The notes below the pieces were generated by a model that ran no database searches, was not told where the DNA came from, and was given only the letters and a program-made list of their open reading frames with translations. From Octopus sinensis (taxonomy: Eukaryota): 64,000 bases of DNA. A program made the translations under genes and the position numbers. Positions 1,024 to 51,457 of this stretch are shown one piece after another (positions within the stretch are counted from its first letter, which is position 1; every line of letters begins with the position of its first letter). Location: assembly GCF_006345805.1 (NCBI RefSeq), contig NC_043001.1, positions 39,742,001 through 39,806,000 on the forward strand, in the 5' to 3' direction.

Positions 1024-1065
1024 CACCAGGTTTCTGTGAAATGTTGACATAAACACCTTCCCGAT
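1024..1065 (-). CDS. 42-nt tail repeat exon (DREGVYVNISQKPG)
   Basis: ttttcttaaag|AT CGG GAA GGT GTT TAT GTC AAC ATT TCA CAG AAA CCT GGT G|gtaagt; flanks 983-1200 are homologous to 2441-2700. Confidence 0.72.
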
Positions 1066-1305
1066 CTTTAAGAAAATGAATTATAAACATGGCGATAAAT
1101 AACATTTAAATTATATTAGTATTGTGCTGATACTAGCATAATAAACACAAATGAGATACACCCAAACACACTCACACACATATACATGCATGTACACACA
1201 TATCAACAGACCAAAGTTAGAGTGTGTAAGAGTGTTATATTTCATGGTTGTTCATTGATAATTTCTAAGATCATGCTGTGCACTAAAAATATTAATTGTA
1301 CTTAC

Positions 1306-1365
1306 CAAGTGATTGCATCTCTAAATATACAGGTCCTCTAGTTTTAGCATATTGCTTTTCCATAG
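1306..1365 (-). CDS. 60-nt tail exon (xMEKQYAKTRGPVYLEMQSL)
   Basis: atttcttgaag|...CTT G|gtaagt, phase 1-1, open frame, YxxM motif. Confidence 0.7.
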
Positions 1366-2481
1366 CTTCAAGAAATTAATTAAAAATGGGCATATTTATT
1401 ATTTGAAGAGGATGCTTTAAATATTTTGATGTGGCACAGAAAGTAACTAAAAAAATACTAAAATATATTATATATTTTATATAGATATACACATGCATTT
1501 AGAAACAAATAAATATTTGACTTCCAATGAAACTGAGTGTACAATATAAGTTCTTTATCCCTCATTGGTATGTTGCAGAAAAGAAACAAATTGCCAAATA
1601 AATTCATTCTGTATGAACAAAAGGAAACAAAGAGCAATTTTGGTAAATGACTTTTCAGAACTAGTGCTTGGACAGAAAGTTCTCCAATGAATTGGCCCTC
1701 AAAATTTTATTCCATGATCAAAATGCTAATTTTGTAAGAGAAATTATATAAAACTAGTACTTATAGGTTGGTTCACAGAATAAAATTTACTCCTATACAT
1801 TTTCAATGTTATGAAAATCTCAGAATGCTATGAGATTAAATTAATTAATTTATTATGAAATTCTGCTATTTCTGTAATTCAAAAGTTTTGTTGATATTTA
1901 AAATTAAGTATATTACCATTAAAAGCCATTCCCAAATATGGCTGGAGAACTAAGATATTTTTCTTAATTATTTTCAAGCTAGAAGTATCTAAAAATGGGA
2001 CTGATTGCAGTTATCAACAACAACAACTGATTATGTGACATATTCCCCATTGCAAATCTCTTCCATACTTTATGTGTATTGCTTGAGTAAATATCTAGTG
2101 AATTTAACTTGAATTAGATCTTTGTTTGGTTTATGTGTACAACTAAGGCTTACAAAAATATATATATGGCCTGGATTATTAAGGATTAATAGAGGTGTAA
2201 ATTATGTATAGAATTTTTAACATTTTCTATGTTGTATTAAAGAACATCCATACACATGCTATTAAACCATATATTTTGCACAAAGAAAGAATTTTTTGCT
2301 AACTTCACTTGGACTGATTCCAGAGACAGGGCTTGGAAATGAGTCCAAAACAAACAAGTATTAACTCTAAACGTGGCTCCCAAGTATGGCCATAACCTCT
2401 GATTGAAATTTAAATAAAATAAAAGGATGAACTTGTGTTTTAATGAATGTAATTTTATTAAAGGGTTGTTTATATACTTAC

Positions 2482-2523
2482 TATCAGGTTTCTTGAAAAC
2501 ATTAACACCAGCATTATCCACAT
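2482..2523 (-). CDS. 42-nt tail repeat exon (xVDNAGVNVFKKPD; no Tyr)
   Basis: atttcttaaag|AT GTG GAT AAT GCT GGT GTT AAT GTT TTC AAG AAA CCT GAT A|gtaagt. Confidence 0.7.
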
Positions 2524-2628: not shown

Positions 2629-2671
<43 letters not shown>

Positions 2672-6600: not shown

Positions 6601-6634
6601 CCTATCATTCATCAATGAGGTAGTTTATTCTTTT

Positions 6635-6945: not shown

Positions 6946-7657
6946 TACTTTTTGGATGCAACACACATCTACATACCTTCGTTGAAGCATCTCAACAATC
7001 TCACTAGACCTACCTTTCAATGTGCCAACTCTGAGGGTGTGAAAGGTGTGTGCTGAGGAGACATAGGGATGGGGGACAGCATTTTACATCTGAAAAAAAA
7101 CTTGCATGAATATTTCGCAGACATATCGTGTAAATACAAAATAGGTCAACATGTATTTACTTCACCAACATTTTATTCGCTTCACAGTCACCACATTTAC
7201 CAGGAGATAGCTACTAGATAGAAATGGAAGTGTAGGAGAGAGTGCTCTGTATTAGTATCCAATAGTGGTATTAAGAGAAAGACTTCTGGTAGAGGTTCAG
7301 AGAGAAAGACTTCTGGTACAGGTGGTGGAGGTGGGTTGGGCAGGTGCACAGCCAACAACCATCCATCATTGACTGCCCAATTCCCTTGATAAAGACCATG
7401 TTAAATATCCTAACAGACATAGCTAAAACCAATGTTTAACATATACCATGGAAAAAGCAGAGATTCAGATGTAATACGAGCAAGATAGAGTAAGGTGAGT
7501 AACAAACAAATGAAGAGATGAAATTTTGAGAATTAGAGCTACAGAAGAAACAGATTTGAACATTTGGATTTCTTAACTTTACTATAACATACAGCATGAG
7601 AACAGACGTAGCTTTATGTAATATAATGCTATTTGCTTCAAGGCATAAATTATACTT

Positions 7658-7694
7658 GGTTCAGATGAAATTTTAATACAAGAACCTTCCATAT
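7658..7694 (-). pseudogene. Dead 42-nt repeat exon (donor deleted)
   Basis: Acceptor ttctttcttaaag| is intact; AT ATG GAA GGT TCT TGT ATT AAA ATT TCA TCT GAA CC runs directly into AAGTAT; restoring 7 nt (TGATAGT, as in the 2482 copy) rebuilds a 42-nt exon plus GTAAGT. Confidence 0.55.
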
Positions 7695-8266: not shown

Positions 8267-8302
<36 letters not shown>

Positions 8303-8606
8303 TGAATGCATGCACATGTGTTTGTGTGTGTGTATGTATGCATGTCTGTCTTTGTGATTATACTCTCAGCACTTGACAACCAGTGCTGATTAGTTTACCT
8401 CCCCTGAGTAACTGAGTTGTTTAGTAAAAAGATTGATAGAAAAAGCAGCAGAAGGGTTCATTTATTCAACTAAAACTCTTCAAGATGGTACACCACAATG
8501 GATGCAGAGAAGTGACTGAAACAAGTGAAAGGTGAAAGGCAAAATATCATTTTGCGAGTAGCATGAACTATAATTCTTTTTACTTATAGGCATTAATTAT
8601 ACTTAC

Positions 8607-8648
8607 TATCAAATACAAGTGAAATAGTAGCATAAGCATTTTCCTCAT
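8607..8648 (-). CDS. 42-nt tail repeat exon (xEENAYATISLVFD)
   Basis: tttattttcatag|AT GAG GAA AAT GCT TAT GCT ACT ATT TCA CTT GTA TTT GAT A|gtaagt. Confidence 0.7.
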
Positions 8649-9127
8649 CTATGAAAATAAAAATGTAAAAATAAATTTGTTTATTGTCTATATATGTGTG
8701 GTAAATGACATCTGAAATAAACTGTTTCTGGGATCAGATGTATTAAAGAACGTTTATAGCATTATAATAAAATATCAGGTTATACTAAAGTATACTGAAA
8801 AAAAAATAAAACAAAAACAAAATAACATATAAAGAAACACTTACAAAATTTAATTACCAATGTAAGTGTGATAAATCAAGAAAAAGATCACTTTGTCTTT
8901 GACTTTTTATATTCAATATTAACTATGGAAAGATCATCAGTCCTATTGTTGTTGTTATTGTTTACGCCTAAGTCAGACATATGATCGCATGCATTTTCTC
9001 CTTAGCATTGAGACATTGAAATAAGATCTGGTCCTCTAATCTATTGAATCCTGTTGAACAACCCTACTCATGCCAACTTGGGAAACAGAAAAAATAAGGT
9101 TCATGATAATGCAACGTGTGTGTGTGT

Positions 9128-9203
<76 letters not shown>

Positions 9204-9460
9204 GTGTGTACAAATCTGTCTGTGTTTATCTTCCCAACATTTGACCAGTGCTGATTAGTTTAGCACCCCAGAGTAACTGAGTTGTTTAATAAAAAAAATT
9301 GATAGAAAAAGCAGTAGTTAATTTATTCAACTAAAACCCTTAAAGATGGTACACCACTATGGATGTAGAGAAGTGACTGAAACAAGTGAAAGGCAAAATA
9401 TCATTTTGATAGTAACATGAACTATAATGCTATTTACTTATAGGCATTAATTATACTTAC

Positions 9461-9502
9461 TATCAGATGCATGTGAAATAGTAGCACAAGTATTTTCTTG
9501 CT
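9461..9502 (-). CDS. 42-nt tail repeat exon (xQENTCATISHASD; Tyr replaced by Cys)
   Basis: tttattttcatag|AG CAA GAA AAT ACT TGT GCT ACT ATT TCA CAT GCA TCT GAT A|gtaagt. Confidence 0.65.
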
Positions 9503-9962
9503 CTATGAAAATAAAAATGTAAAATAAATATGTTTATTGTCTATATATGTGTGGTATATGACATCTGAAATGAACTGTTTCTAGGATCAGATGTATTAAA
9601 GAACGTTTATAGCATTATAACAAAATATCAGGATATACTAAAGTATACTGAAATAAAATAAAACAAAAACAAAATAACATATAAAGAAACACTTACAAAA
9701 TTCAATTACCAATGTAAGTGTGATAAATCAAGAAAAAGATCACTTTCTCTTTGACTTTTTATATTCAATATTAACTATGGGAAGATGATCGGTCCTATTG
9801 TTGTTGTTACTGTTTACACCCAAGTCAGACATATGATCGCATGCATTTTCTCCTTAGCATTGAGACACTGAAATAAGATCTGGTCCTCCAATTCATTGAA
9901 TCCTGTTGAACCACCTTACACATGCCAGCTTAGAAAACAGAAAAAATAACGATCATAATGAT

Positions 9963-10013
<51 letters not shown>

Positions 10014-10040
10014 ATGTGTGTGCATAAAATACATATTTTA

Positions 10041-11271
10041 TTGGTTCATCCCATAAATAATGCAGTTTTTTCAATTGCATGGACTAAATCTTAGTGGGGA
10101 ATGGGATAAGCTACCTGCGTCAACTTGCTATAAAAGCAGGTAGTAATTTTACCTTGTCCTTACTCTTAGTGCAAGTTTTGAAGAGTGCACTTCAATTCTA
10201 ACAGTTATTTTTTCAAAGTGACAAAGGAACATATTCGGCATATTTTGCTTTATGAGTTCAATAAAGGCAAAAACGCAGCAACAAGTGCAAGGAATATTAA
10301 TGCAGTATATGAGGATCAGACAATAAGCATAAACCAGTGTCAATGGTGGTTCCAGAAATTCCGAGCCGGAAACTGCACCCTTGCAGATGAGCTTTGTCCT
10401 GAAAGATCTGTAAAGCTCAACAAGGATGTTCTGCAAACTCTGGTGGAACAAAATTCCACCGTAACTGTTGAGGAATTAGCAGAGAGACTTGGATTTGGTC
10501 ATTCAACTATTCATTGACAGCTGTGTGCCATTGGAAAAGAGAACAATTTGGGTTAATGGGTTTCTCACAAACTTTCCAAATTTAATTGCATGCAAAGAGT
10601 GAATGTGTGATCTTCTTTGCTGTCATATCTCACAAATGAACCTTTATGGACCGAATTGTGACTGGTGATGAGAAATGGATTCTCTATAAAAATGTCAAGC
10701 ACCAAGGACAGTGAGTAGGGAAATAAGAAACAATGGCACCCCCAGACTAAAGGTCTTCCCCCACATAAGGTGTTGTTATCTGTTTGGAGGGATATGAAAG
10801 GTTTAGTCCACTTTGAACTTTTAAATCCAAAGCAAACAATAACAAAAATCTACTGCAGCTTGATTGTAGAAAAACCACCATCTTTGGTTTCAAGACAAAA
10901 GGTGTTCTTCCATCAGGCCACATACAGCAAGAATAAGATTCCAAAAGCTGGGGCAGTTAAAATGGGAAACCCCCCCCCCCCCCATCATATTCGCTGGACA
11001 TTGCACCATCTCATTATCATTTATTCCGTGGTCTTCAAAATCATTTGGATGGAAAAAATATAAATTCCGTAGATGAAGTCAAAACAGTACTGGGGGATTT
11101 TCTTTGTCACAGACAAGTGAATTTTGGAAGAGGGGCCTTTACCAGATAGATGGAAGAGCATTGTAGAAAATAAAGGAGAGTATATTTTAGATGAAAAAAA
11201 CTTTGTTTCTCTTGATTTTGAAAAATAATAGAAGCATAAAAAAAAACTGCATTATTTATGGAATGACCCTA
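10041..11271 (+). mobile_element. Degenerate mariner transposon
   Basis: TIRs ttggttcatcccataaataatgcag / ctgcattatttatggaatgacccta, TA flanks; HIRHILLYEFNKG...QWWFQKFRAG N-terminus; later frameshifts and stops. Confidence 0.85.
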
Positions 11272-11446
11272 TATATTATATGTATATATTAAATGTTGTA
11301 AAAAGATTGCTCTTCAGCCATGTGGTTTGGGATTTTGTCCCACTGTGTAACACCTCTGGCATATGCTTCCTATTGTATCCCCATGTCAATCAAATCATGT
11401 GGATTTTGTAGACAAAATTTGAAAGAAGCCTGTCATCTCTTTCTTT

Positions 11447-11516
<70 letters not shown>

Positions 11517-11618
11517 TGTTTGTGTGTGCATATCTGTCTTTGTGTATGCATATCTTCCCAACATTTGACAATCAGTGCTGATTACTTTACCTCCCCTGAG
11601 TAACTGAGTTGTTTAGTA

Positions 11619-12103
11619 CCGTTTATCCTCGAGTATAACCCATACTTTTTTTCCAAAATTTAAAGGTCAAAATCCCTAGTGCGTACTATATACAAAGTCA
11701 AAAATGAAAATTATTTTCTAAGCAATGTCCAAGTCCCTATTTGCTGTCCGGCAATGTTTATTCAGACGCATTTTGTGATGTCGGTCGTGAAAATACCTTA
11801 AATCATCCATAACTTTCAGTAAGCAACATTTATTAAACGTTATTACTGTTACTTCTTTATTTTCTGCAAACAAAATGCACAAAAAAGCTACACGTTTGCA
11901 TTATGTTATATATAGAAAATAATAATAATAAAGGATGTTACCATACACATTTTTACAAACCAAGGACGTTATATAGCCCTCCTTGACTCAAGTTAGAGAA
12001 GGGGTGCATATTATACACAAGATTTAGGTTTATCAGAGGTACAGCCCACTAAAAATCCCCTGCATATTATACTCAAGGGCGGACTATACTCGAGGATTTA
12101 CGG
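11619..12103. mobile_element. Tc1/mariner-superfamily MITE (485 bp)
   Basis: TIRs CCGTTTATCCTCGAGTATA / TATACTCGAGGATTTACGG and TA TSD; removing it rejoins the host repeat unit (gtttagta|aaaaa). Confidence 0.85.
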
Positions 12104-12286
12104 TAAAAAAAATTGATAGAAAAAGCAGCAGGAGGGTTCAGTTATTCAACTAAAACTCTTCAAGATTGTACACCACTATGGATGCAGAGAAGTGACTGAA
12201 ACAAGTGAAAGGTGAAAGGCAAAATATCATTTTGAGAGTAACATGAACTATAGTTCTTTTTACTTATAGGCATTAATTATACTTAC

Positions 12287-12328
12287 TATCAAATACAAGT
12301 GACAAAGTAGCATAAGCATTTTCCTCAT
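12287..12328 (-). CDS. 42-nt tail repeat exon (DEENAYATLSLVFD)
   Basis: tttattttcatag|AT GAG GAA AAT GCT TAT GCT ACT TTG TCA CTT GTA TTT GAT A|gtaagt. Confidence 0.7.
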
Positions 12329-12617
12329 CTATGAAAATAAAAATGTAAAAATAAATTTGTTTATTGTCTATATATGTGTGGTAAATGACATCTGAAATAA
12401 ACTGTTTCTAGGATCAGATGTATTAGATAACGTTTATAGCATTATGATAAAATATCAGGATATACTAAAGTATACTGAAATAAAACAAAACAAAAACAAA
12501 ATAACATATAAAGAAACACTTACAAAATTCAATTACCAATGTAAGTGTGATAAATCAAGAAAAAGATCACTTTCTCTTTGACGTTTTAAACTTAATATTA
12601 ACTATGGATAGATGATA

Positions 12618-18324: not shown

Positions 18325-18341
18325 CTTCTGTTGACGAAGTG
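18325..18341 (-). CDS. 17-nt micro-exon (phase 2-1)
   Basis: ttttatgaatttaatag|CACTTCGTCAACAGAAG|gtaagt; restores phase 1 after the 19-nt exon. Confidence 0.65.
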
Positions 18342-19473: not shown

Positions 19474-19492
19474 TCTTTATTGTTTTTGACAC
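19474..19492 (-). CDS. 19-nt micro-exon (phase 1-2), juxtamembrane tail
   Basis: cttttttcttttatcag|GTGTCAAAAACAATAAAGA|gtaagt; phases fit the TM exon upstream and the 17-nt exon downstream. Confidence 0.7.
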
Positions 19493-19891
19493 CTGATAAA
19501 AGAAAAAAGTAATGTGTATAGAAATGTTATTCAATATCAAACATTTCTTGTAAGAGTAGTAATAGTGTGGTGTTGGTGAGAGAGTATGACGGATAGGGGA
19601 GAGCGGAAGTAGGGCTCGCAGGGCGGAAGCAGGGCTTGCAGGGCGCATGCGCGGGAGGAAGTGGAAGCGACAGGCAGAACGCACGTGTGGGATCGAGCAG
19701 TTGCGGCAGACACGACGAAGGCACCAGACGCATCGAGTTGGCTAAGAGGTATCCGAATTCATCTCCGACAAGGTAAGACCCAATTACATTTCCATTCTCC
19801 CTTTTTCTGTTGTACTCTTTTCATCGTCCACACCACAAGCTATTTCAGCAAATAAACACTCGGTTTTATAAAAAATAAAAATAAAAAAATT

Positions 19892-20650
19892 ATGCAGAGT
19901 GCTTGGGTTTCGCGCGAACCTATAACACTGTTTTGCGGCGACACTGATGTGGTCGCTTGGTTGAAGAGAGTGAAGTTGGTGGCGAAGCTCTATTGTATAG
20001 GTGACCTGGTGAGCTTCATGCCGCTGTACTTGGATGGCCCGGCGTTGGCGTTATATTTAGAGATGGAGGAGACGGACCAACTTAGCGCAGATAAAGTAGA
20101 AATCCGACTGATGGAGGCCTTTGCGGAAGGTATGTTCGAGGCATACGCTCGCCTGGGTAGAATGAGATGGACTGGGCAACAGATGGACGTGTTTGCCAAT
20201 GAGCTTAGAAGACTGGCTAAATTGGCGGGTTATGAGGGAGAGTCGCTAGAACGGACGGTTAGGTTGGCGTTCGTGACTGGCTTTCCCAACATCATGTCGG
20301 TCGAGCTACAGAAGCTCCCGAACGTGCGTTCAATGCCGATGGCCGACATCATATCTCGGGCATGTGTACTAGTTTCATGCAGCAGGATGACGTCGGTAGC
20401 AGCGACTGCAATGTCGAAAAGTGGCCCAGCTAGGAGCAGCGGAGAGGGGCTGAGGAAAGAACGTGTGCGACCGTTCAAAGGACAGTGTTTCCGGTGCCAA
20501 GGTCCACACATGGTGCGTGACTGTGGGTCGCCCAAGACTGAAGTGATTTGCTACCGGTGTCAAGAGCCGGGGCATGTAGCCAGCGAGTGTCTGCGGGGAA
20601 ATGGACTGCGGGAGACTACTGCGCCGGTAGTTGTCCCTTTGGATCAGTAG
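19892..20650 (+). CDS. gag: Gypsy Gag with two zinc knuckles
   Basis: CFRCQGPHMVRDC and CYRCQEPGHVASEC; 252-aa open frame. Confidence 0.9.
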   Translation: MQSAWVSREPITLFCGDTDVVAWLKRVKLVAKLYCIGDLVSFMPLYLDGPALALYLEMEETDQLSADKVEIRLMEAFAEGMFEAYARLGRMRWTGQQMDVFANELRRLAKLAGYEGESLERTVRLAFVTGFPNIMSVELQKLPNVRSMPMADIISRACVLVSCSRMTSVAATAMSKSGPARSSGEGLRKERVRPFKGQCFRCQGPHMVRDCGSPKTEVICYRCQEPGHVASECLRGNGLRETTAPVVVPLDQ

Positions 20651-27103: not shown

Positions 27104-27210
27104 ATTTCTTACTGACGAATCTAAGGGCCTATGGAAGATTGGCTTGATTTAATTTAATCAGGTTAGTTTACCATTAAACAGTAGATGAAACGGTGCATCG
27201 TATAAGAAAT
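27104..27210 (+). ncRNA. Type I hammerhead ribozyme, copy C
   Basis: Identical to copy A; cut after 27202. Confidence 0.85.
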
Positions 27211-27327
27211 TACAGGGTAAATGTTTTTTAATTTTCTCCTGGTTTGCAGAATTAATGTTATTTTGCAGTTGAAGCTTTGGCTGTTATTTCTAGTGGGTGA
27301 ATGGCCTATTATGGCCGTTCCTTGATT

Positions 27328-27377
<50 letters not shown>

Positions 27378-28330: not shown

Positions 28331-28483
28331 GTGTGTGTGCGTGTGTGTGTGTGTGTGTGTGCATGTGCGTGTGTGTGTGTGTGTGTGTATACATATATAT
28401 ATATATATATATATATGGATTTCGTAGACAGGAACTGAAACATATCAATCGTATATATGTATGTATATATGTAAGTGCATGTG

Positions 28484-30346
28484 TTTTAGTATTGGCAACA
28501 TGAATGACAATGGTCAGATGCTACTTGAATTTTGCACATACCATAACCTGTGCATCATTAACACATTCTTTGCCAACAAGACATCCCACAAGGCATCTTG
28601 GAGACATCGAAGATCTCACCACTGGCAACAGCTGGATATCATCATTACATGACGATCCTTTCTGAATTCTGTTCAACTGACCCAGAGTTACCAAAGCACA
28701 GATTGTGACACAGATCATTCACTAATAAGAAGCAGGGTGAGGATTCTGCCTAAAAAAGTCTATCACTCCAAGAAAATGGGCTAACCACACATTAACACTG
28801 CCAGAACCTCAGACCCTACACTGCGAAAATGTTTTGCTGCTTCTATCAAGGTTGCCCTCAGTAGCTGCTCAACCTCCTCTGCTGAAAGTAGGTGAAATTA
28901 TATCAGGGAAGCTTTGTATACCACATCAACAGATACTTTCAGCATGAGAGAAAGGCAAAACCCAGATTGGTTCAGTGTTGGGATCTCAGAGCTGGAGCCA
29001 GTTATCGAAGCAAAGTGTGCAGCTCTGATGCAATACAAGAGTGATTCTTCTACAAAGTCACTCGAAGAACTCAGAAAGGCAAGAAGTAAAACCCAACTGA
29101 CAGCCAGACGCTGTGCAAATAGGTATTGGCAGGAAATCTGTCAGAGCATCCAGTCAGCTGCTGACAGGGGCGACACCCGTGGGATGTATGCCAGTTTGAA
29201 GAAGGCCCTCGGTCCATCTGCAACCAAGTCAGCCCCTCTGAAATCAACTACAGGAGATCTCATCAAGGACCAAAGGAAGTAAATGGATAGATGGGTGGAG
29301 TACTACCAGGATCTCTACTCATGGGAGACCACGGTAGCTGAGGCTGCAATCGAGGGTGTCAAAATCTTGCCAGTCATGTGCAAACTTGACAATCTATCTT
29401 TTATAGCAGAGCTCACCAAGGCTATTGACTCCCTAGGAAGTAACAAGGCTCCGGGAAAAGATGGCATCTCCTTAGAGATCATCAAAACCGGCAAAAACAC
29501 CGTCCAGCTTCGGCACCTTCATGAGCTTCTCTGTCAGCGCTGGGAAGAGGGTACAGTCCCTCAGGATATGTGGGATGCTAAATTCATTACGCTTTACAAA
29601 AACAAAGGTGACCGTGGTGATTGTAACAATTACTGTGGAATATCTCTTCTAAGCACTGTTGGAAAGGCTCACATTATCCTGTCCAGGCTACAACTGCTTG
29701 CTTCTCAAATTTATCCAGAATTGCAGTGTGGCTTTAGAAGAAGCAGATCAACTATTCACATGATATTCTCCATGTGCCAACTTCAGAAGTCCAGAAAGCA
29801 GAAAATGCCATTATATATGGCCTTCATTGATCTGACAAAGGCCTTTGACTTGGTAAGCAGAAAAGGCCTCTTCATCCTGCTCCAAAAAATCAGATGTCCA
29901 CCAAAGCTGCTGAGGATCATCAAATCTTTCCATGATGATATGCTTGCTAGGGGCACTAGGTCTGTGGGAAGACCATTTTTATGATACAAAGATGTTTGCA
30001 AAGGGGACATGCATGCCAGCAACATCAATATTACCAATTGGAAAGCAGTTGCCAGCAGCCGTGGAGATTGGCGCCATACCATAAAAGAGGGAACACAAAG
30101 GAGTGACATAGAGAGAGAGGAGAAATGGAAAGACAAGAAAAGATATCAACAGGAAACTATGACATTACAACCAGCCAGGCAAAGTCTTCGCTACATTTGC
30201 AACACCTGCCAGAGGGAGCGTTTGTCCAGGATAGAACTACACAGCCACAGCAGGAGATGTATTAGGACATGAAATGTAAAAGCCAGACTAGATTATTTTA
30301 TGCGCAACACCATTGTCTCCCGAGACAAAAAAGGATGCCAAAAACA
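28484..30346 (+). mobile_element. BovB-like RTE LINE, 5'-truncated and internally deleted
   Basis: Closely similar to 42193-45040; lacks the equivalent of 43929-44640 (junction 29943/29944, GC microhomology); C-terminal CNTCQRERLSRIELHSHSRRC. Confidence 0.9.
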
Positions 30347-35109: not shown

Positions 35110-36402
35110 CGAGGGGCGTTCAATAAGTAATGCTCCTGACCCACTTCCCATAGCAGTAGAGCAACGAAACTTGGCACAGTTATTAGTCTTTTTCTACATA
35201 GGAACCACCCAGAGTTACGCATTTCTCCCCTCGTTTGATGCAGCTCTGGAGACCGTTTTTGTAGAAGACCCCAGCTTGGTCCTCCAACCACGACGTAACT
35301 TCAGAAACCAAGGCTGCATCATCTGGGAAACGCTTTCCTTTCAAAAACAACTTCATGACTGGGAAGAGATGAAAATCAGAGGGTGCAAGGTCAGGAGAGT
35401 AGGGAGGATGGGGGAGGAGTTCATAGCCATACGTCTGTGCTTCTGATCTGGTGACACGCGAGTTGTGGACCGGAGCGTTGTCCTGCAGGAGGAGGATGCC
35501 TTTGCTGATCTTGCCCCGCAACTTGATTTTGATAGCTTCTCTTAATTTCCTCAAAAGTGAAGTATAATAGGCTCCTGTAATTGTGGTACCCTTTGCCAGG
35601 AAATCTGTCATCACTACTCCGTCCTGGTCCCAGAAGATTGTGAGCATGATCTTGCCAGTGGAGGGCTGCACACTTGCCTTCTTTGGAGGAGGTGAGTCAT
35701 GGTGCTTCCACTGCATTGACTGGGCTTTGGTCTCTGGATCATAGTGATGGACCCAGGTTTCATCCTGTGTAATCAGTCTTTTGAAAAAGTTTGACTCATC
35801 TTCTTGGCACATCTCCAAATTCATCCTCGAGCACTCGACGCGTTCTTGCTTCTGGAAAGGTGTGAGCAACCTGGGAATCCATCTGGCAGACACCTTTTGC
35901 ATATGCAAATGGTCATGAATGATAGTTTCCACAGACCCGGTACTAATCTTGACCTCATGGACTATTTGGCGAATAGTTATGCGTCGATCTTCCAAAATGG
36001 CAGCCTCGACTTGACGGACAGATACCTCATCAATGGCAGAAGTGGGGCGACCAGATCTGGGAGCTGTTTCCACAGAGTTCCGACCATGTTTGAATTCACG
36101 ATGCCAGCATTTTACAAGGTCATATGATGGGGCATCATCACCATAAGTTACTTTCATTTCATCAAAAGTCTCCCGTGGTGTGCGTCCTTTCAAATACAAA
36201 AACCGGATCACTGTTCGACACTCAACAGGCTCCATTTCACACTTGACTCAGTTCAAACACCTGTAAATCAGAAACCACTATTAGTTCAGAGCTGTAATTT
36301 TCCACTTAATCTATAGAAATATCAATAATTGCACATGCAAAATTTCAGCTAGATCAAAAAACTGCAAGTGGGCCAGAGGCATTACTTATTGAACGCCTCT
36401 CG
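35110..36402 (-). mobile_element. Mariner transposon (1293 bp), apparently intact
   Basis: 24-bp TIRs CGAGGGGCGTTCAATAAGTAATGC (1 mismatch), TA TSD. Confidence 0.95.
35183..36235 (-). CDS. Mariner D,D34D transposase, 350 aa
   Basis: WIPRLL, QDETW, QDNAPVH, YSPDLAPSDF with 34 residues between the second and third Asp; no stops. Confidence 0.95.
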   Translation of the reverse strand: MEPVECRTVIRFLYLKGRTPRETFDEMKVTYGDDAPSYDLVKCWHREFKHGRNSVETAPRSGRPTSAIDEVSVRQVEAAILEDRRITIRQIVHEVKISTGSVETIIHDHLHMQKVSARWIPRLLTPFQKQERVECSRMNLEMCQEDESNFFKRLITQDETWVHHYDPETKAQSMQWKHHDSPPPKKASVQPSTGKIMLTIFWDQDGVVMTDFLAKGTTITGAYYTSLLRKLREAIKIKLRGKISKGILLLQDNAPVHNSRVTRSEAQTYGYELLPHPPYSPDLAPSDFHLFPVMKLFLKGKRFPDDAALVSEVTSWLEDQAGVFYKNGLQSCIKRGEKCVTLGGSYVEKD

Positions 36403-41669: not shown

Positions 41670-42177
41670 CATGGAAAAATGCAAGCATGTAAAGTATTAT
41701 TCTTAAGATTACAAACCTGGAAAAGTACAGGGCAAGTTATAACACCTGTAAAAGTACAGGACAAACTATTACTTCAAGTAAAGTAAAGAATAAGAAACTT
41801 TTTACTTAAAATATTGCAGCAAAGAATGCCAGTTCTTCTAATTTATCACTCTTTACAGTTCTCATCCTTTAAATTTATTGTACAAAACTGTTCAGCTAAT
41901 TTGTAAGTTTATCTAGTTAGTCATTTTTGTCTGTATTTAAGGTAGTAAATTAGCCAAATTCTACTTAAATAAGTATAGTGTTGTTTGTAAACTATAATAA
42001 AATAATTTTTAATATTCAAATTTTAATTTTAGCTGCAATATTTTAAATAAAAGTTTCTTATTCCTTACTTTACTTGAATAGTTTGTCCTATACTTTTACA
42101 GGTGTAATAACTTGTCCTGTACTTTTCCAGGTTTATAATCTTAAGAATATTACTTTTCATGCTTGCCTTTTTCCATG
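41670..42177. mobile_element. MITE with ~150-bp TIRs
   Basis: TA|CATGGAAAAATGCAAGCATG...CATGCTTGCCTTTTTCCATG|TA; arms about 41670-41820 and 42030-42177. Confidence 0.85.
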
Positions 42178-42192
42178 TAATCCATTACATGG

Positions 42193-45040
42193 AAAACTCA
42201 TTACTCTCCTCAATAGAACCACCATCAGGAGGCACTGAGCGTATCCTCTCACTGCGCCTCTCAACTTCTTCTGGCTCAGTAAATCTACTGAGCATCTATG
42301 CTCCCACTCTCTACAGCTCAGAGGAGACCAAGGACCAGTCCTACAAAGATCTCAACTGTGTCATAAAAAATATACCAACAACTGAAAATATCTACCTTCT
42401 AGGGGATTTTAACGCTCGCGTGGCATCTGACCATGATTCGTGGCCCATTTGTGTTGGACACTTTGATATTGGCAATATGAATGACAATGGTCAGAGACTA
42501 CTCAAATTCTGCACATACCATAACCTGTGCATCACAAACACATTCTTTACCAAAAAGCCATCCCACAAGGCATCTTGGAGACATCCAAGATCTCACCACT
42601 GGCATCATCTGGATCTCATCATTACACGGAGATCCTTTCTGAATTCTGTTCTATTGACCCACAGTTACCACAGCGCGGATTGTGACACAGATCATTCACT
42701 AATAAGAAGTAGAGTGAGGATTCTGCCTAAAAAGTCCATCGCTCCAAGAAAGTGGACTGACCATGCATTAACACTGCCAGAACCTCGGACCCTACACCGC
42801 AAAAATGTTTTGCTGCTTCTATCAAGGTTGCCCTCAGTAGCTGCCCAACCTCCTCTACTGAAAGTAGGTGGAATTATATCGGGGAAGCTTTGTATACCAC
42901 ATCAATAGATGCTTTCAGCATGAGAGAAAGGCAAAACCCAGATTGGTTCAATGCTGGGCTCTCAGAGCTGGAAACAGTTATCGAAGCAAAGTGTGCAGCT
43001 CTGATGCAATACAAGAGTGATTCTTCTACAAAGTCACTCGAAGAACTCAGAAAGGCAAGAAATAAAACCCAACTGACAGCCAGACGCTGTGCAAATAGGT
43101 ATTGGCAGGAAATCTGACAGAGTATCCAGTCAGCTGCTGACAGCGGTGACACCCGTGGGATGTATGCCAGTTTGAAGAAGGCTCTCGGTCCATCCGCAAC
43201 CAAGTCAGAACCTCTGAAATCAACTACAGGAGATCTCATCAAGGATCAAAGCAAGCAAATGGATAGATGGGTGGAGCACTACCAGGATCTCTACTCACGG
43301 GAGACTACAGTAGCTGAGGCTGCAATCGAGAATGTCAAGATCTTGCCAGTCATGTGCAAACTTGATAGTCCGCCATCTATAGCAGAGCTCACCAAGACTA
43401 TTGACTCCCTAGCAAGAAACGAGGCTCCGGGAAAAGATGGCATCTCCTCAGAGATCATCAAAGCCAGCAAAAACACCATCCTGCTTCGGCACCTTCATGA
43501 GCTTCTGTGTCAGTGCTGGGAAGAGGGTACAGTCCCTCAGGATATGCGGGATGCTAACATCATTACGCTTTACAAAAACAAAGGTGACCGTGGTGATTGT
43601 AACAATTACTGTGGAATATCTCTTCTAAGCACTGTTGGAAAGACCTTTGCTCACATTATCCTGGCCAGGCTACAACTACTTGCTTCTCGAATCTATCTGA
43701 AATCGCAGTGTGGCTTTAGAAGAAGCAGATCAACTATTGATATGATATTCTCCATACGCCAACTTCAGGAGAAGTCCAGAGAGCAGAAAATGCCATTATA
43801 TATGGCCTTCATTGAACTAACAAAGGCCTTTGACTCGGTAAGTAGAAAAGGCCTCTTCATCCTGCTCCAAAAAATCGGATGTCCACCAAAGCTGCTGAGG
43901 ATCATCAAGTCTTTCCATGATGATATGCAAGGGACCATACAGCACAATGGTTCAACATCAGCCGCCTTCCAAATAAAAAACGGGGTAAAGTAAGGTTGTG
44001 TCCTCGCTCCTACATTATTTGGCATTTTCTTCTCGCTCTTGCTCTCACATGCCTTTCAGACATCAGATGATGGAGTGTTTCTGCACAGTAGAAGTGAAGG
44101 GAAACTGTTCAATCTCTCGCGCCTGCATGCCAAGACCAAAATCAGAAACGTCCTGATCAAGGAGATGCTATTTGCTGATGATGCCGCTCTGGTATCACAC
44201 ACAGAAGAAGCCCTCCAAAGGCTCATTAACTGTTTTGAGCAAGCATGTAACGACTTTGGCTTAGCTATCAGCCTTAAGAAGACCAACATCATGGGTCAGG
44301 CTACATCGGACATCCCAAACATACATATTGGAGACCACAGATTACAGGAGGTGGAGAAGTTTACCTATCTTGGCTCTACCGTCACCTACAACCCATCCCT
44401 TGATGCTGAGCTCAATATACGCATTAGCAAGGCAGCTGCTGTGATGGCCCAACTCTCCAAACGGGCATGGGACAACAATAAGCTGACCAAGACCACGAAA
44501 ATGAAGATCTACCAGGCATGTGTACTTAGCACTCTACTGTATGGAAGTGAGACTTGGACGCTATACACACACCAAGAGCGTCGCCTAAACATCCTCCACA
44601 TCAAATGGCAGAAGCCCCAAGGACATACTCTACAGAGAGCTTGCTAGGGGTACTAAGTCTGTGGGTAGACCGTTCTTACTTTACAAGGATGTTTGCAAAA
44701 GGGACGTGAAGGCCTGCAATATCAATATTAGCAGTTGGGAAGCAATTGCCAGCAACCGTGGAGATTGGCGACGTACCGTAAAAGAGGGAATACAAAGGAG
44801 TGACAGAGAGAGTGAGGAGAAATGGAAAGACAAGAAAAGACGTCAACAAGAAACTATGACATTACAACCAGCCAGGAACAGACTTTGCTACATATGTGGC
44901 ACCTGCCAGAGGGAGTGTTTGTCCAGGATAGGACTACACAGCCACAGCAGGAAATGTATCAGGACATGAAATGTAAAAGCCGGACTAGACTATTTTATGC
45001 GCAACTCCATTGACTCCCGAGACAAAAATGATGCCAACAA
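42193..45040 (+). mobile_element. BovB-like RTE LINE, 5'-truncated
   Basis: LLGDFNARV, SADCDTDH (APE), FADD (RT), CGTCQRECLSRIGLHSHSRKC; a few stops and one internal gap near 44600. Confidence 0.93.
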
Positions 45041-45733: not shown

Positions 45734-45832
45734 CTCTTATTATGTGGAATTTATAAGCAAGAAACCCCAAAGTTATTAATAATAATACACTTCCTACAGT
45801 ACAACCAATAACTGCATCCAAAGAGACATTTT
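45734..45832 (-). CDS. Transmembrane exon (99 nt, phase 1-1)
   Basis: Acceptor atatcgtttcag|, donor AGAG|GTTGGT; translates ENVSLDAVIGCTVGSVLLLITLGFLAYKFHIIR (21-residue hydrophobic run followed by basic residues). Confidence 0.8.
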
Positions 45833-48962: not shown

Positions 48963-49271
48963 CCTTATATCTCAAAGTAAAAACAGCAGTTTTTTTTCCT
49001 ATGGAGTTTTCCACTGTTAAGGTATAAGTACCAATATCATCATCTTTGATGTCTTCTCTCTTTAAACTAGTACAGCTTCCTTTGAAAGGAAACTCATCTT
49101 GTAAATAATCAGTTATTAAATATTTGTTTGAGTCAATTAATTCCTCATTTTTCTGCCATTTTACATCAGATTTTGGATGTGAATAAAAACACTGTTTGAA
49201 AATTACAGTTTCTTTCTTTGAAACATTTCTAATTTTTGAACCATTTGATAATGAACTGAAAGTAGGTTTCA
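48963..49271 (-). CDS. Ig-like (I-set-like) domain exon (309 nt, phase 1-1)
   Basis: Acceptor ttttttccaccag|, donor AAGG|GTAAGT; VKPTF...QCFYSHPKSDVKW...DDDIGTYTLTVENSIGKKTAVFTLRYK; matches ORF track 48922..49272; the F-strand Cys is replaced by Leu. Confidence 0.9.
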
Positions 49272-51205
49272 CTGGTGGAAAAAAAATATATTAAATGAGA
49301 AAAATAACAATATATATTATAAATTTGAAATAGAAGATTTCTAAGTTTTCAAAAAAAAAATAAGATGAAATAATAAAACAAACTATGTAATTTGATAACA
49401 AAAATTTACTTTCAGACTAATTCAGCTAGTATTTAATGCTAAATACTACATTGAAAATTCTAAACATCTGCATTGAAAATTCTAAACATCCCTAGATTTC
49501 AAACAAACTCAGCTAATCATCCCATCCAATGACAACCTCTACAGCAACTATAACATATTTTGCAGTGTATAGTTCCAGAAGATCTTCTAACATTGTTGTC
49601 TCATCACATTCCACTTGATCAAGTCACCTAACTGCCAGCATTTCTCTAAATCTTACACTCACAATCTGTTGTAGTAAGTATGTAAAATATCTGAATAACC
49701 TGCCAAATGCCAAATACATTTTTAATTCTTGTGTAAGACCCTCTCAATTTTACATATCACTAAATCATGTGGATTAACTACCAGTGAGTAATTTACAGGA
49801 ATCTGTTCTATAAATAATAATACATTACCTGAAAGAAATTCATTCATACATACAAGTCTTCATTATCAAGATTAATAATAGAGTAAAATACACCTTTATG
49901 TAATATTAGATTTTATCACTCTTAATTCCAAATCCACAAATTTTTGCTTATTAGACATCTGGCAACTTTGTGAAAGAGTCTTATTCACCACTTTTTAACC
50001 AGTCCAATCATATGGACATATGCATATGGCAGTCAATTCTGTGATATTAGCTACCTATATTATATTCCTATACATGACAAACGCTCAGTCAGTTACTTGT
50101 TTTCAACACTACTCATTATTTAAGATGTGACCATTTTGGCTTTTAAGTACAAAAAAGCCTTTGATCACTTAAAACTAGCAAGTCAAGTTAATAATTTCAA
50201 ATGTTATCTAAAAATAGATAACACTTACTGATTATTTTCATATATTTGATCAAAAGCAAGTGGCCAATGTGTAACATAAAAGAAATATTTTCAAAGGAAC
50301 TGTATTAGATTTCACTTGAGAGATTTTGAGATTTATGATAATGTAGGAAGCAATTTACATTATCTGATATTGTCCTAGATATCACACTGAAATTGTTCCT
50401 GAAAATTGACTAATTCCTTACAAGTTTTGAAATTTATCATTCTCAAATATCACTTAATCCAAAATGTGTATCATCTCCATTAAAGACAATCTCTCCAATG
50501 CAGCTCAGAAACAATCAGTATTTCTAAGATTATACTGATAATCTTGATTCATCGGTTCTTATATTACCTTAAGTCTCAAGACATCAGAAGTAGCAGACAT
50601 TCTATAAACCATCCCGTTTATGTTACACAGTGTCTTTCATACAGACCTAAACATGATATAGATATTTCTTTTCTCTCTAAAGCTAACAAATATAACATAA
50701 TATAAAATTTAAATGAAAATTACTAACTATTAAAAGTTTTAGGAATGTTTTTGGAAAGATCTATTGTAACATTTAGAAAACAAATAATTTATTTGCCAAA
50801 ATTGTATATCTTTATAAACTAAATTACTGTAACAAGAAATATTTGATGACCTTGCCTGATAAGTTAATTTGCTGTATATTCATTATACAGGTATACAATA
50901 GACGGTTGAAATGGAACAAACTAAATAATAAGAAAATTCAATAGGGAAACTATTTCACTGAATAATATGAATGTATAAAATTTTTTTGAAAACAGCTTCA
51001 CTTCTTTTGGAGAAAATCAGATGAATTGAATTCTTAACTATTTACATATCAAACCATTCCTAAAACTTTATAGTTACAAATTGTCAGTTTTATTGATATG
51101 CATAAAAAAACACAGTCCAACAATCTTCTAATAGGATAAAATCAAATAAATAACTGATTGTAAATATGTTTTTAAAATTAAATTGTGACTTTGTAAAATA
51201 CTTGC

Positions 51206-51457
51206 CTTGAATTTTGTAGTTTGATGATTTACTCACGTTAAAATATTCATTGCTTACATGACACTTCCATGTACCAGTATCATTTAAAGTAGGATTGTTT
51301 ATAGGTAATACTCTCATATCATAAGTATTCTTAGTGACATTTCCCCATTTTTGCTCCAGTTTGTATGTATGATTGTCTGGGTTTCCATCAAATGCAGAGC
51401 AATTAATTGTTATATTATTTGTCTTATTTGAAATATGTAAGTTTACTTGAGGAGGAT
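51206..51457 (-). CDS. Ig-like domain exon (252 nt, phase 1-1)
   Basis: Acceptor ttatttcttttaag|; translates xPPQVNLHISNKTNNITINCSAFDGNPDNHTYKLEQKWGNVTKNTYDMRVLPINNPTLNDTGTWKCHVSNEYFNVSKSSNYKIQ, with a B-strand Cys, a DGNP turn and a DTGTWKC F-strand; donor CAAG|GCAAGT. Confidence 0.9.

What the first reader, a model, noticed from the sequence alone, without database searches (positions are those of the whole stretch)
1024..51457. Hidden Ig-superfamily receptor whose cytoplasmic tail is a string of tyrosine-motif mini-exons
Seen: eleven exons, nine of them under 100 nt and not recognisable from the ORF track, splice in frame to give Ig-Ig-TM plus a ~105-aa tail with NAYATL, NAYATI, QYAK, PVYLEM and GVYVNI, and no catalytic domain in the window. 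Established: YxxM and YxN are consensus sites for PI3K p85 and Grb2 SH2 domains, and YATI recalls the EPIYA(T/I) class of Src-family sites. Inference: a lineage-specific, non-catalytic signalling receptor (immune-like or neural adhesion-like) with an evolvable tail.
Basis: partly seen in the sequence, partly recalled or inferred. Interest (0 to 1): 0.8.

Follow-up and report, generated by a model that had tools for sequence, protein, structure and literature searches.

The report
Octopus Ig receptor with modular tyrosine tail
The predicted gene is real: it is the middle part of an already annotated but unstudied octopus gene for a kinase-less Ig-domain membrane receptor whose intracellular tail is a duplicating string of tiny exons, most carrying tyrosine docking motifs.

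Summary
Observation confirmed. All eleven exons are on the minus strand with acceptor and donor sites, and they splice in frame. The spliced product equals residues 234-531 of a public Octopus vulgaris protein, CAI9722592.1 (709 aa, "uncharacterized"). It differs by one substitution and by 23 residues of the first Ig domain, which the annotation drops. So the gene is not hidden, and the window holds only the middle of a 144-kb gene. Two more Ig-like domains lie upstream, and eleven more tail mini-exons lie downstream (tail 286 aa, 19 Tyr).

The gene belongs to a multigene family found only in Octopus (bimaculoides, sinensis, vulgaris). Members have 4-8 Ig domains, a transmembrane helix and no catalytic domain. 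Their tails run from 110 to 430 aa and are built from 14-aa and 20-aa modules. The 14-aa module is one 42-nt exon with consensus D.D.AYVNVS.KP. The 20-aa module is one 60-nt exon with consensus ..QYAE....YL.M. All are phase 1-1 exons that multiply by local tandem duplication.

YxN, YxxM and YxxL/I are the conserved features, which fits a receptor with a built-in SH2-docking scaffold. Phosphorylation, partners and tissue are untested. A YxxΦ endocytic role is the main rival.

Moderate interest: a new, uncharacterised member of a known kind of receptor.

The parts
51206..51457 (-). Ig-like domain exon 1 of the window (third Ig-like domain of the annotated protein). 252 nt, phase 1-1, GC donor at 51205-51204.
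   Evidence: Pfam Ig_3, Ig_2 and ig score above their cut-offs. The exon is 98% identical to P0028 residues 234-293. The full exon and its GC donor are conserved in paralogous loci L001, L002 and L003.
48963..49271 (-). Ig I-set domain exon 2. 309 nt, phase 1-1.
   Evidence: Pfam I-set scores 46.5 bits against a cut-off of 23.7. The exon is 100% identical to P0028 residues 294-396.
45734..45832 (-). Transmembrane exon. 99 nt, phase 1-1. Encodes ENVSLDAVIGCTVGSVLLLITLGFLAYKFHIIR.
   Evidence: Mean Kyte-Doolittle hydropathy is 2.33 over 19 residues, followed by basic residues. The exon is 100% identical to P0028 residues 397-430.
19474..19492 (-). 19-nt micro-exon (GVKNNK + 2 nt). It shifts the phase from 1 to 2.
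   Evidence: Exon and splice sites are conserved in O. vulgaris paralogue L002 at 28459-28477. It is present in annotated models P0028, P0010, P0022, P0017 and P0020.
18325..18341 (-). 17-nt micro-exon (D-TSSTE). It restores phase 1; 19 + 17 = 36 nt.
   Evidence: Its homologue is at L002 32818-32834. It is in frame only when paired with the 19-nt exon.
12287..12328 (-). 42-nt mini-exon DEENAYATLSLVF (YxxL).
   Evidence: Found by the pattern scan. It equals P0028 residues 442-455. It lies in a duplicated unit at 12104-12616.
9461..9502 (-). 42-nt mini-exon KQENTCATISHAS. The tyrosine codon is replaced by TGT (Cys).
   Evidence: The unit is 88-91% identical to the two NAYAT units.
8607..8648 (-). 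42-nt mini-exon NEENAYATISLVF (YxxI).
   Evidence: The unit at 8426-8937 is 95% identical to 12106-12616.
7656..7694 (-). Degenerate extra copy of a mini-exon (DMEGSCIKISSEP). 39 nt, weak GTATAA donor, Tyr replaced by Cys.
   Evidence: blastn shows similarity to the other units; sequence read. It resembles DVEDVYATISSEPS of O. bimaculoides P0023.
2482..2523 (-). 42-nt mini-exon NVDNAGVNVFKKP. This is a 14-aa module with Tyr replaced by Gly.
   Evidence: It is 86% identical in nucleotides to the L001 exon DMDNAYVNVSKKLN.
1306..1365 (-). 60-nt mini-exon TMEKQYAKTRGPVYLEMQSL. This is a 20-aa module carrying YxxM.
   Evidence: It is homologous to L002 46372-46431.
1024..1065 (-). 42-nt mini-exon DREGVYVNISQKPG (YxN). 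It ends at a GT donor with no stop, so the gene continues beyond the window.
   Evidence: P0028 continues for 178 more residues.
8271..12616 (-). Region of tandem duplication that produced the three NAYAT-type exon units: 8271-9172, 9137-10022 and 12104-12616. A TE fragment is inserted between the second and third units.
   Evidence: Self-comparison gives 88%, 95% and 91% identity.

Best explanation
**What it is.** The window carries the central 50 kb of a 144-kb Octopus gene. It matches O. vulgaris CAI9722592.1, or the same locus in a very close relative. The product is a type I membrane protein of the immunoglobulin superfamily with no enzymatic domain.

**Gene layout.** Each Ig domain and the transmembrane helix is one phase-1-1 exon. 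After a conserved pair of micro-exons (19 + 17 nt), the cytoplasmic tail is an array of 42-nt and 60-nt phase-1-1 mini-exons. Most of these encode one or two tyrosine motifs. The array grows and shrinks by local tandem duplication. Because every unit is frame-neutral, it can also be varied by exon skipping.

**Most likely mechanism.** Ligand binding or clustering of the Ig ectodomain leads to tyrosine phosphorylation of the tail by cytoplasmic Src-type kinases. The phosphorylated modules then recruit SH2 proteins:
- Grb2/Drk-type adaptors at YxN
- the PI3K regulatory subunit at YxxM
- other SH2 proteins at YxxL/I

The receptor would therefore carry its own multi-site docking scaffold. This combines what vertebrates split between a receptor such as CD28, CD19 or Fc-gamma-RIIA and an adaptor such as LAT.

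**Shown here:** gene structure, domain content, topology, absence of a catalytic domain, module conservation, duplication and lineage restriction.

**Inferred:** phosphorylation, SH2 partners, and cell type (immune or neural).
For: **Gene model.** The splice product is identical to an independent public annotation. That annotation was built from Iso-Seq, RNA-seq, protein alignments and ab initio predictions (PMC10700109). RefSeq models of paralogues have the same layout. Examples are XP_036359229.1, mapped exon by exon on L001, and XP_036355409.1, which reads TM|GVKRNKE|TSSAKG|....

**Domains and topology.** Ig domains pass the Pfam cut-offs. Topology is supported. Only Ig families are found in the full-length proteins.

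**Module conservation.**
- Among 39 distinct 14-aa modules, Tyr is kept in 36 and Asn at +2 in 35.
- Among 31 distinct 20-aa modules, the second Tyr is kept in 29, with Met (21) or Leu (8) at +3.

**Enrichment over shuffled tails.**

| Protein | YxN (observed / expected) | YxxM (observed / expected) | YxxΦ |
|---|---|---|---|
| P0017 | 9 / 1.3 | 10 / 1.4 | - |
| P0028 (this gene) | 3 / 1.0 | 3 / 0.7 | 14 of 19 Tyr / 4.4 expected |

**Established knowledge.** pYxN is the Grb2 SH2 consensus and pYxxM is the p85 SH2 consensus.

**Evolvability.** Tandem duplicates are shown. Tail lengths vary from 110 to 430 aa.
Against: - No expression, phosphorylation or binding data were available here.
- The 11-exon in-window model has only five tyrosines, with one YxN and one YxxM, which is not significant on its own.
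- Three of the seven in-window motif-module copies carry Cys or Gly where the Tyr should be. These seven are the six annotated mini-exons plus the unannotated remnant at 7694-7656.
- dN/dS of the Ig and TM exons against the closest paralogous locus is about 1 (1.05, 1.52, 1.4). That fits diversifying selection, but equally relaxed constraint.
- The annotated protein has no obvious signal peptide, so the 5' end of the model is unverified.
- Module statistics come from an HMM seeded with Tyr-containing modules. Recent duplicates also inflate the enrichment.
Confidence: 0.6

Rival explanations
1. The tyrosine modules are mainly YxxΦ sorting signals bound unphosphorylated by the AP-2 mu2 subunit. 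On this reading the protein is an endocytic, phagocytic or scavenger-type Ig receptor whose tail drives internalisation rather than SH2 signalling.
For: 14 of the 19 tail tyrosines of P0028, and 4 of the 5 in the window, fit Yxx[LIMVF]. Shuffled tails give 4.4 and 1.2. YATL, YATI, YVNI and YLEM all fit the textbook YxxΦ signal.
Against: Asn at +2 is conserved in 35 of 39 modules and Met at +3 in 21 of 31. AP-2 binding does not require either. Both are the defining positions for the Grb2 and p85 SH2 domains. Acidic residues before the Tyr (D.D.AY, EEEQY) are typical of kinase substrates. Dozens of repeats are not needed for sorting.
Confidence: 0.2
2. This particular copy is a decaying or functionless paralogue. 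The family may be functional, but the window's gene is drifting: its tail modules are losing tyrosines, and its transcripts are annotation-level noise.
For: - dN/dS is about 1 or more against L002 in Ig1, Ig2 and TM.
- Tyr is replaced by Cys or Gly in exons 9502 and 2523 and in the remnant at 7694.
- The introns are full of young TEs, including a full-length LTR element about 70 nt upstream of the 19-nt exon.
- The annotated N-terminus lacks a signal peptide.
Against: - All eleven exons are open, with intact splice sites.
- The frame-critical 19 + 17-nt pair is intact.
- The annotated open reading frame continues for 709 aa to a stop codon.
- dN/dS near 1 is also usual for fast-evolving recognition receptors.
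Confidence: 0.12
3. The membrane-proximal pair of DNYxT[IL] exons works as an ITAM-like unit that recruits a tandem-SH2 kinase (Syk or Shark), as in oyster CgIgR or Drosophila Draper. The distal modules would be secondary.
For: Paralogues P0010 and P0022 read EDNY[VA]TI-x10-YATI. This fits [DE]xxYxx[LI]x(6-12)Yxx[LI] (consensus as quoted in PMC6994640). The window has ENAYATL and ENAYATI. They would be 10 residues apart if the frame-neutral exon 9502 were skipped.
Against: In the annotated isoform and in the 11-exon model the spacing is 24 residues, so the consensus is not met. A spacing of 10 also fails the stricter x(6-9) definition (PMC9546547). Several paralogues have lost one of the two tyrosines (P0018, P0023, P0024).
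Confidence: 0.1

Closest known systems
Vertebrate non-catalytic, tyrosine-phosphorylated IgSF receptors (PECAM-1/CD31, Fc-gamma-RIIA, CD28, CD19, SIRP-alpha)
   Same: - Tandem Ig ectodomain with one domain per phase-1 exon, a single TM helix and no enzyme domain.
- A tail whose only recognisable features are tyrosine motifs (YxxM, YxN, YxxL/I).
- In PECAM-1 the tail is likewise split over many short, alternatively spliced exons (own knowledge, not tested here).
   Different: - No sequence relationship beyond the generic Ig fold. The PDB search gives only titin, contactin and Robo-type I-set matches.
- The tail is a long array of two repeating modules, with up to about 25 modules in P0017. Vertebrate tails carry a few unique motifs.
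- ITIM and ITAM consensus motifs are not a family feature.
Transmembrane adaptor LAT/NTAL and multi-site docking proteins (IRS, Gab)
   Same: Many repeated YxN and/or YxxM sites preceded by acidic residues. The predicted role is a phosphotyrosine scaffold for Grb2 and PI3K (own knowledge for these families; motif counts).
   Different: Those proteins have no ligand-binding ectodomain, or are cytosolic. Here the scaffold is fused to a multi-Ig receptor. There is no homology.
Oyster CgIgR (five Ig, TM, ITAM tail; binds bacteria, recruits Syk) - PMC6994640
   Same: A molluscan IgSF type I receptor with a tyrosine-motif tail and no kinase domain.
   Different: CgIgR has one classical ITAM. It did not appear among the hits of any search here. 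The octopus tail modules have no counterpart outside Octopus.
Hydractinia Alr family (clustered, fast-evolving IgSF genes with ITAM/ITIM tails) - PMC9546547
   Same: - A lineage-restricted, tandemly clustered IgSF multigene family.
- One Ig domain or TM helix per exon.
- Highly divergent cytoplasmic tails with tyrosine motifs.
- Alternative splicing alters the tails.
   Different: A different phylum and no detectable homology. Alr tails are not built from repeated mini-exon modules.
Repeated EPIYA-type tyrosine-phosphorylation segments of bacterial injected effectors
   Same: A variable number of short repeated segments, each carrying one phosphorylatable tyrosine. Copy number changes by recombination or duplication.
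   Different: This is an analogy only. The window has no EPIYA motif (it reads E-N-A-Y-A-T-[LI]), the family consensus differs, and this is a host membrane receptor.

Membership tests
Immunoglobulin superfamily, type I membrane protein | Ig-like domains recognised by curated profiles above threshold | tested here: met
   Scores against cut-offs: I-set 46.5 / 23.7 bits, Ig_3 42.2 / 30, Ig_2 36.1 / 27, ig 27.4 / 21.8.
Immunoglobulin superfamily, type I membrane protein | Single TM helix after the Ig domains, with the ectodomain outside | tested here: met
   The 19-residue helix has a mean hydropathy of 2.33 and is followed by K, H, R and K. There are 10 N-x-S/T sequons before it and 1 after. A signal peptide is seen in family members P0016, P0017 and P0018 but not in the annotated P0028.
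Immunoglobulin superfamily, type I membrane protein | One domain per exon with phase 1-1 borders | tested here: met
   Ig1 is 252 nt, Ig2 309 nt and TM 99 nt, all phase 1-1.
Receptor tyrosine kinases or other catalytic receptors | Cytoplasmic kinase, phosphatase or cyclase domain | tested here: not met
   Pfam finds only Ig families in full-length P0028, P0016, P0023 and P0024. P0017 adds one spurious repeat hit in its tail. The only enzymatic domains in the window belong to transposable elements.
ITAM-bearing activating immunoreceptors | [DE]xxYxx[LI]-x(6-12)-Yxx[LI] in the tail | tested here: not met
   There are 0 matches in the window model and in P0028, where YATL and YATI are 24 residues apart. 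The consensus is met in paralogues P0010, P0022 (x10) and P0016.
ITAM-bearing activating immunoreceptors | Recruitment of a tandem-SH2 kinase (Syk, ZAP-70 or Shark) | not testable with these tools
   Needs binding assays.
ITIM-bearing inhibitory immunoreceptors | [SIVL]xYxx[IVL] in the tail | tested here: not met
   There are 0 matches in the window part. P0028 has one (SKYFEL, outside the window), which is no more than shuffled tails give (expected 0.8).
Multi-site phosphotyrosine docking receptors and adaptors (CD28, CD19 and LAT-like function) | Conserved YxN and YxxM motifs in excess of chance | tested here: met
   At family level, Tyr is kept in 36 of 39 modules and Asn at +2 in 35 of 39. 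The second Tyr is kept in 29 of 31 modules, with Met or Leu at +3 in 29 of 31. P0017 has 9 YxN and 10 YxxM against 1.3 and 1.4 expected. This gene has 3 and 3 against 1.0 and 0.7 (p = 0.07 and 0.03). The window part alone has 1 and 1, which is not significant.
Multi-site phosphotyrosine docking receptors and adaptors (CD28, CD19 and LAT-like function) | Tyrosines are phosphorylated and bind SH2 domains | not testable with these tools
   Needs experiments.
EPIYA-repeat proteins | E-P-I-Y-A core motif | tested here: not met
   Direct reading of the spliced tail shows that only E-N-A-Y-A-T-[LI] occurs.

The most novel reading that the evidence does not exclude
The Octopus-only family could be a cephalopod counterpart of the vertebrate paired immune-receptor families. 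It would be tandemly clustered, with fast-evolving Ig ectodomains (dN/dS about 0.4-1.5). Signalling strength and quality would be set by an exon 'barcode' of SH2-docking modules that changes over evolution by exon duplication and within an animal by cassette splicing. The conserved 19 + 17-nt micro-exon pair would act as a frameshift switch. Including the 19-nt exon alone yields a tail-less ...GVKNNKE* decoy. One annotated paralogue model ends exactly that way (P0005).
Probability: 0.15. Interest if true: 0.7.

Novelty: new member of a known kind. Interest (0 to 1): 0.4.

Why it matters
Cephalopods have large brains and a cellular immune system, but almost no characterised surface receptors that signal through phosphotyrosine docking. 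This family is restricted to Octopus, clustered, fast-evolving and structurally simple to test. It offers concrete candidates for non-self or cell-cell recognition receptors. It is also a clean natural example of how a signalling tail can be built and tuned by duplicating frame-neutral mini-exons. For annotation practice, it shows that 17-60-nt exons in TE-rich 100-kb genes can be recognised from sequence. It also shows that the public model of this gene probably truncates one Ig domain by missing a conserved GC donor.

Tried and rejected
1. **The 19-nt exon as a frame-breaking false exon.** I first concluded this. I rejected it after finding the conserved 17-nt partner exon and annotated models that contain both.
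2. **Cys repeatedly replacing the phosphotyrosine as hard-wired A-to-I editing.** I rejected this as a pattern. Proper module alignment shows two of the supposed cases are Tyr-to-Asp/Asn next to a conserved Cys. The variable first Tyr of the 20-aa module is replaced by H (6), C (5), D (2) and N (1), which is ordinary single-base decay.
3. **Further Ig or signal-peptide exons in 51458-64000.** Neither tblastn with all family proteins nor blastn with the upstream part of L003 found any. Collinearity with paralogous loci stops at about 54.7 kb, where TE sequence begins.
4. **Exact look-up of window TE ORFs to identify the species.** Nothing was found. The species was identified instead through P0028.
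5. **A specific named relative of the ectodomain.** PDB sequence searches gave only generic I-set matches.
6. **Literature on the family or its LOC identifiers.** None was found.
7. **The P0028 locus DNA.** It could not be fetched because the gene range exceeds 100 kb.


Full report
**1. What the window is**

The window is 38% G+C and packed with transposable elements and microsatellites. It is octopod nuclear DNA. The gene in question lies on the minus strand.

**2. Checking the observation**

All five quoted motifs are present in minus-strand frames.

- **The three large exons.** Reading the DNA around them gives Ig1 (51457-51206, GC donor AAG|GCAAGT), Ig2 (49271-48963) and the TM exon (45832-45734, 99 nt). 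All three are phase 1-1.
- **The tail exons.** The tail exons share near-identical flanks: ttcttaAAG or tttcatAG acceptors and GTAAGTAT donors.
- **Content-blind scan.** I scanned for a pyrimidine tract plus AG, an open phase-1-1 segment of 36-66 nt, and a GTRAGY donor. The scan returned the six tail mini-exons plus one microsatellite false hit on the gene strand. It returned nothing on the opposite strand.
- **The 19-nt exon.** That was wrong. It is conserved with both splice sites in a paralogous O. vulgaris locus. It is followed by a 17-nt exon (18341-18325) that restores the phase.
- **The joined product.** With both micro-exons, the eleven exons (252, 309, 99, 19, 17, 42, 42, 42, 42, 60 and 42 nt) join into one open frame of 321 residues.

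**3. Independent confirmation and identity**

- **Homologues.** Homology searches found only Octopus proteins.
- **The matching protein.** One of them, P0028, is O. vulgaris CAI9722592.1 (UniProt A0AA36AWL0, 709 aa, named after LOC115212114). It matches the window at 98-100%.
- **Differences.** The spliced window model equals its residues 234-531, with two differences. One is a single Pro/Ser substitution. The other is 23 residues of Ig1 (GTWKC...YKIQ), which the annotation removes by using an internal GT donor.
- **Which Ig1 version is right.** Paralogue RefSeq models keep these residues, which include the F-strand cysteine. They do so through the GC donor, which is conserved in L001, L002 and L003.
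- **Extent of the gene.** The annotated gene spans 144.4 kb on a 147.5-Mb chromosome. Residues 1-233 (two more Ig-like domains) and 532-709 (eleven more tail mini-exons) have no match in the window. The window therefore holds only the middle of the gene.
- **How the annotation was made.** It combined Iso-Seq, RNA-seq, protein alignments and ab initio predictions (PMC10700109). Which evidence supports this particular model could not be checked.

**4. The family**

- **Members.** Full-length members occur in O. bimaculoides, O. sinensis and O. vulgaris. They are 700-1220 aa long, with a signal peptide, 4-8 Ig domains, a TM helix and a tail.
- **Clustering.** Accession numbers and contigs indicate tandem clusters. 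CAI9722591, CAI9722592 and CAI9722594 are consecutive. Several O. sinensis genes lie on CM016863.1.
- **Paralogue exon map.** I mapped XP_036359229.1 on its locus, L001. It shows Ig, Ig and TM exons, then twelve exons of 42-63 nt with the same splice-site flanks, spread over 47 kb.
- **Relation to the window.** The window is collinear with L001 and L002, including the introns, at 70-90% identity. These are paralogues.
- **Restriction to Octopus.** An exhaustive phmmer search of 1.84 billion representatives with the 108-aa tail found eight proteins. Six are from Octopus. The other two are low-complexity repeat proteins from a spider and a bacterium. The tail-only word-indexed search also gave Octopus only.
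- **Ectodomain relatives.** PDB sequence searches gave only generic I-set neighbours such as titin, contactin, Robo and DSCAM.
- **Catalytic domains.** Pfam finds no catalytic domain in any full-length member.

**5. Anatomy of the tail**

Tails are built from two modules.

| Module | Exon | Consensus | Best-kept positions |
|---|---|---|---|
| 14-aa | one 42-nt exon | D-M-D-[DG]-[AV]-Y-V-N-[VI]-S-x-K-P-x | Of 39 distinct copies: Tyr 36, Asn +2 35, Pro 34, Asp 34 |
| 20-aa | one 60-nt exon | x-V-E-[ED]-Q-Y-A-E-x-S-x-P-x-Y-L-[CE]-M-K-x-P | Of 31 distinct copies: second Tyr 29, Met (21) or Leu (8) at +3 |

In the 20-aa module the first Tyr is kept in only 17 of 31 copies. It is otherwise H, C, D or N.

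A third, membrane-proximal module, [DE][DN]xY[AEV]TI, follows the micro-exon pair. The window's NAYATL and NAYATI exons belong to this type.

Motif counts compared with shuffled tails:

| Protein | YxN (observed / expected) | YxxM (observed / expected) | YxxΦ (observed / expected) |
|---|---|---|---|
| P0017 | 9 / 1.3 | 10 / 1.4 | 23 / 5.8 |
| P0028 (this gene) | 3 / 1.0 | 3 / 0.7 | 14 of 19 Tyr / 4.4 |
| Window part only | 1 / 0.5 | 1 / 0.1 | 4 of 5 Tyr / 1.2 |

There are two caveats. The modules were collected with an HMM seeded from Tyr-containing copies. Recent duplicates also inflate the enrichment.

Three in-window module copies have lost the tyrosine: TGT in exon 9502, GGT in exon 2523, and TGT in the unannotated remnant at 7694-7656.

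**6. Evolvability**

- **Tandem units.** Three copies of a 0.5-0.9-kb unit carrying the NAYAT-type exon lie at 8271-9172, 9137-10022 and 12104-12616. They are 88-95% identical.
- **A conserved exon pair.** The 60 + 42-nt pair at 1365 and 1065 is homologous to pairs in L001 and L002.
- **Frame neutrality.** All exons except the micro-exon pair are phase 1-1, so any of them can be duplicated or skipped without breaking the frame.
- **The micro-exon pair.** These two exons must be used together. The 19-nt exon alone gives ...GVKNNKE followed by a stop. The 17-nt exon alone gives a frameshifted tail. Skipping both stays in frame. One annotated paralogue model (P0005) ends ...VKRNKE-stop, but its TM exon is also frameshifted, so its quality is doubtful.
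- **Selection.** dN/dS of Ig1, Ig2 and TM is 1.05, 1.52 and 1.4 against L002. It is 0.83, 0.53 and 6.35 against L001; the TM value there rests on half a synonymous difference. Counts are small. The values fit either fast evolution of a recognition receptor or relaxed constraint.

**7. How it most likely works**

- **Shown.** It is a type I IgSF membrane protein without an enzyme domain. Its cytoplasmic tail has, as its only conserved features, tyrosines in YxN, YxxM and YxxL/I contexts preceded by acidic residues.
- **Inferred from textbook SH2 specificity** (pYxN for Grb2, pYxxM for PI3K p85). Ligand-driven clustering leads to phosphorylation by Src-type kinases and then to recruitment of adaptor and PI3K-type SH2 proteins. 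The receptor would carry its own multi-site docking scaffold. I put this at about 0.6.
- **Main rival: YxxΦ endocytic signals (0.2).** The conservation of Asn +2 and Met +3 argues against it, because AP-2 binding does not need either.
- **Decaying copy (0.12).** This cannot be excluded without expression data.
- **ITAM reading (0.1).** It fails for the annotated isoform, where the spacing is 24 residues. It holds for paralogues P0010 and P0022, where the spacing is 10 (consensus definitions from PMC6994640 and PMC9546547).

**8. Comparison with known systems**

- **Function.** It resembles the vertebrate non-catalytic tyrosine-phosphorylated IgSF receptors combined with a LAT-like scaffold.
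- **Gene organisation.** It resembles PECAM-1, whose tail is also split into many short exons (own knowledge).
- **Evolutionary style.** It resembles clustered invertebrate IgSF families such as Hydractinia Alr (PMC9546547). Oyster CgIgR (PMC6994640) is a molluscan precedent for an Ig receptor with a tyrosine-motif tail.
- **Homology.** None of these is a homologue beyond the Ig fold.
- **The EPIYA comparison.** It is an analogy only.

**9. Verdict**

- **Observation:** confirmed in full.
- **Interpretation:** partly supported. The structure, non-catalytic nature, lineage restriction and evolvable tail all hold. 'Hidden' is wrong, the window shows only part of the gene, and signalling is untested.
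- **Novelty:** a new, uncharacterised member of a known kind of receptor. I found no literature on the family.
- **Interest:** 0.4.

Noticed in passing
window 19565-23817 (+): A full-length, apparently young LTR retrotransposon sits in the intron about 70 nt upstream of the 19-nt micro-exon. It has 274-nt LTRs that are 98% identical, TG...CA ends and a 5-bp target duplication (AATAG). Its gag (252 aa, zinc knuckle) and pol (986 aa; protease, RT/RNase H, integrase) ORFs are open. The insertion is absent at the corresponding site of paralogous locus L002.
   Followed up: partly
window 51205-51276 (-): The public model CAI9722592.1 drops 23 residues of the Ig domain, including the F-strand Cys (GTWKC...). 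It does so by using an internal GT donor. The full exon with a GC donor (AAG|GCAAGT) is open here and conserved in three paralogous loci and their RefSeq models. This is probably an annotation error.
   Followed up: partly
window 7656-7694 (-): An unannotated, degenerate extra copy of a tail mini-exon (DMEGSCIKISSEP). It is 39 nt long, has a weak GTATAA donor, and has Cys in place of the tyrosine. It is probably a dying exon.
   Followed up: partly
window 9461-9502, 7656-7694 and 2482-2523 (-): Three module copies have lost the motif tyrosine, through TGT, TGT and GGT codons. Across the family, the first Tyr of the 20-aa module is also often replaced: H 6, C 5, D 2, N 1 of 31 copies. The second Tyr is almost invariant.
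   Followed up: partly
window 48963-49271 (-): The second Ig domain lacks the canonical F-strand cysteine. It reads D-I-G-T-Y-T-L-T-V where Y-x-C is usual. It has a cysteine in G-S-C-T-S-L instead. The same holds in all family members seen, which suggests a non-canonical disulfide.
   Followed up: no
window 35183-36235 (-): An intact 350-aa mariner/Mos1-type transposase ORF (Transposase_1, HTH_48). It is 94.6% identical in nucleotides to a copy in L003.
   Followed up: partly
window 28914-30272 and 42159-44969 (+): Two copies of one LINE family, with endonuclease and reverse-transcriptase ORF fragments, lie inside the 26-kb intron between the TM exon and the 19-nt exon.
   Followed up: no
window 26080-27332: A 489-nt unit is tandemly repeated 2.6 times at 98% identity.
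   Followed up: no
window about 55900-61300 (-): LTR-element gag, protease and integrase ORFs and RT fragments sit upstream of Ig1. Collinearity with the paralogous loci ends at about 54.7 kb. No further Ig exon is detectable up to 64000.
   Followed up: partly
L003 (O. vulgaris CATOCA020000001.1) versus L002 (OX597841.1): L003 looks like a near-identical duplicate or haplotig of L002 that lacks the segment carrying the TM exon. This explains the TM-less models P0006 and P0011. A model on the same contig, named 'adhesion GPCR G6-like' (P0033), ends in tail modules of this family and is probably a chimeric annotation.
   Followed up: partly
L002 18306-18371 and 28459-28477 (model P0005): An annotated paralogue model uses the 19-nt micro-exon without the 17-nt one and so ends ...VKRNKE-stop. 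This is a possible tail-less isoform or a faulty model.
   Followed up: partly
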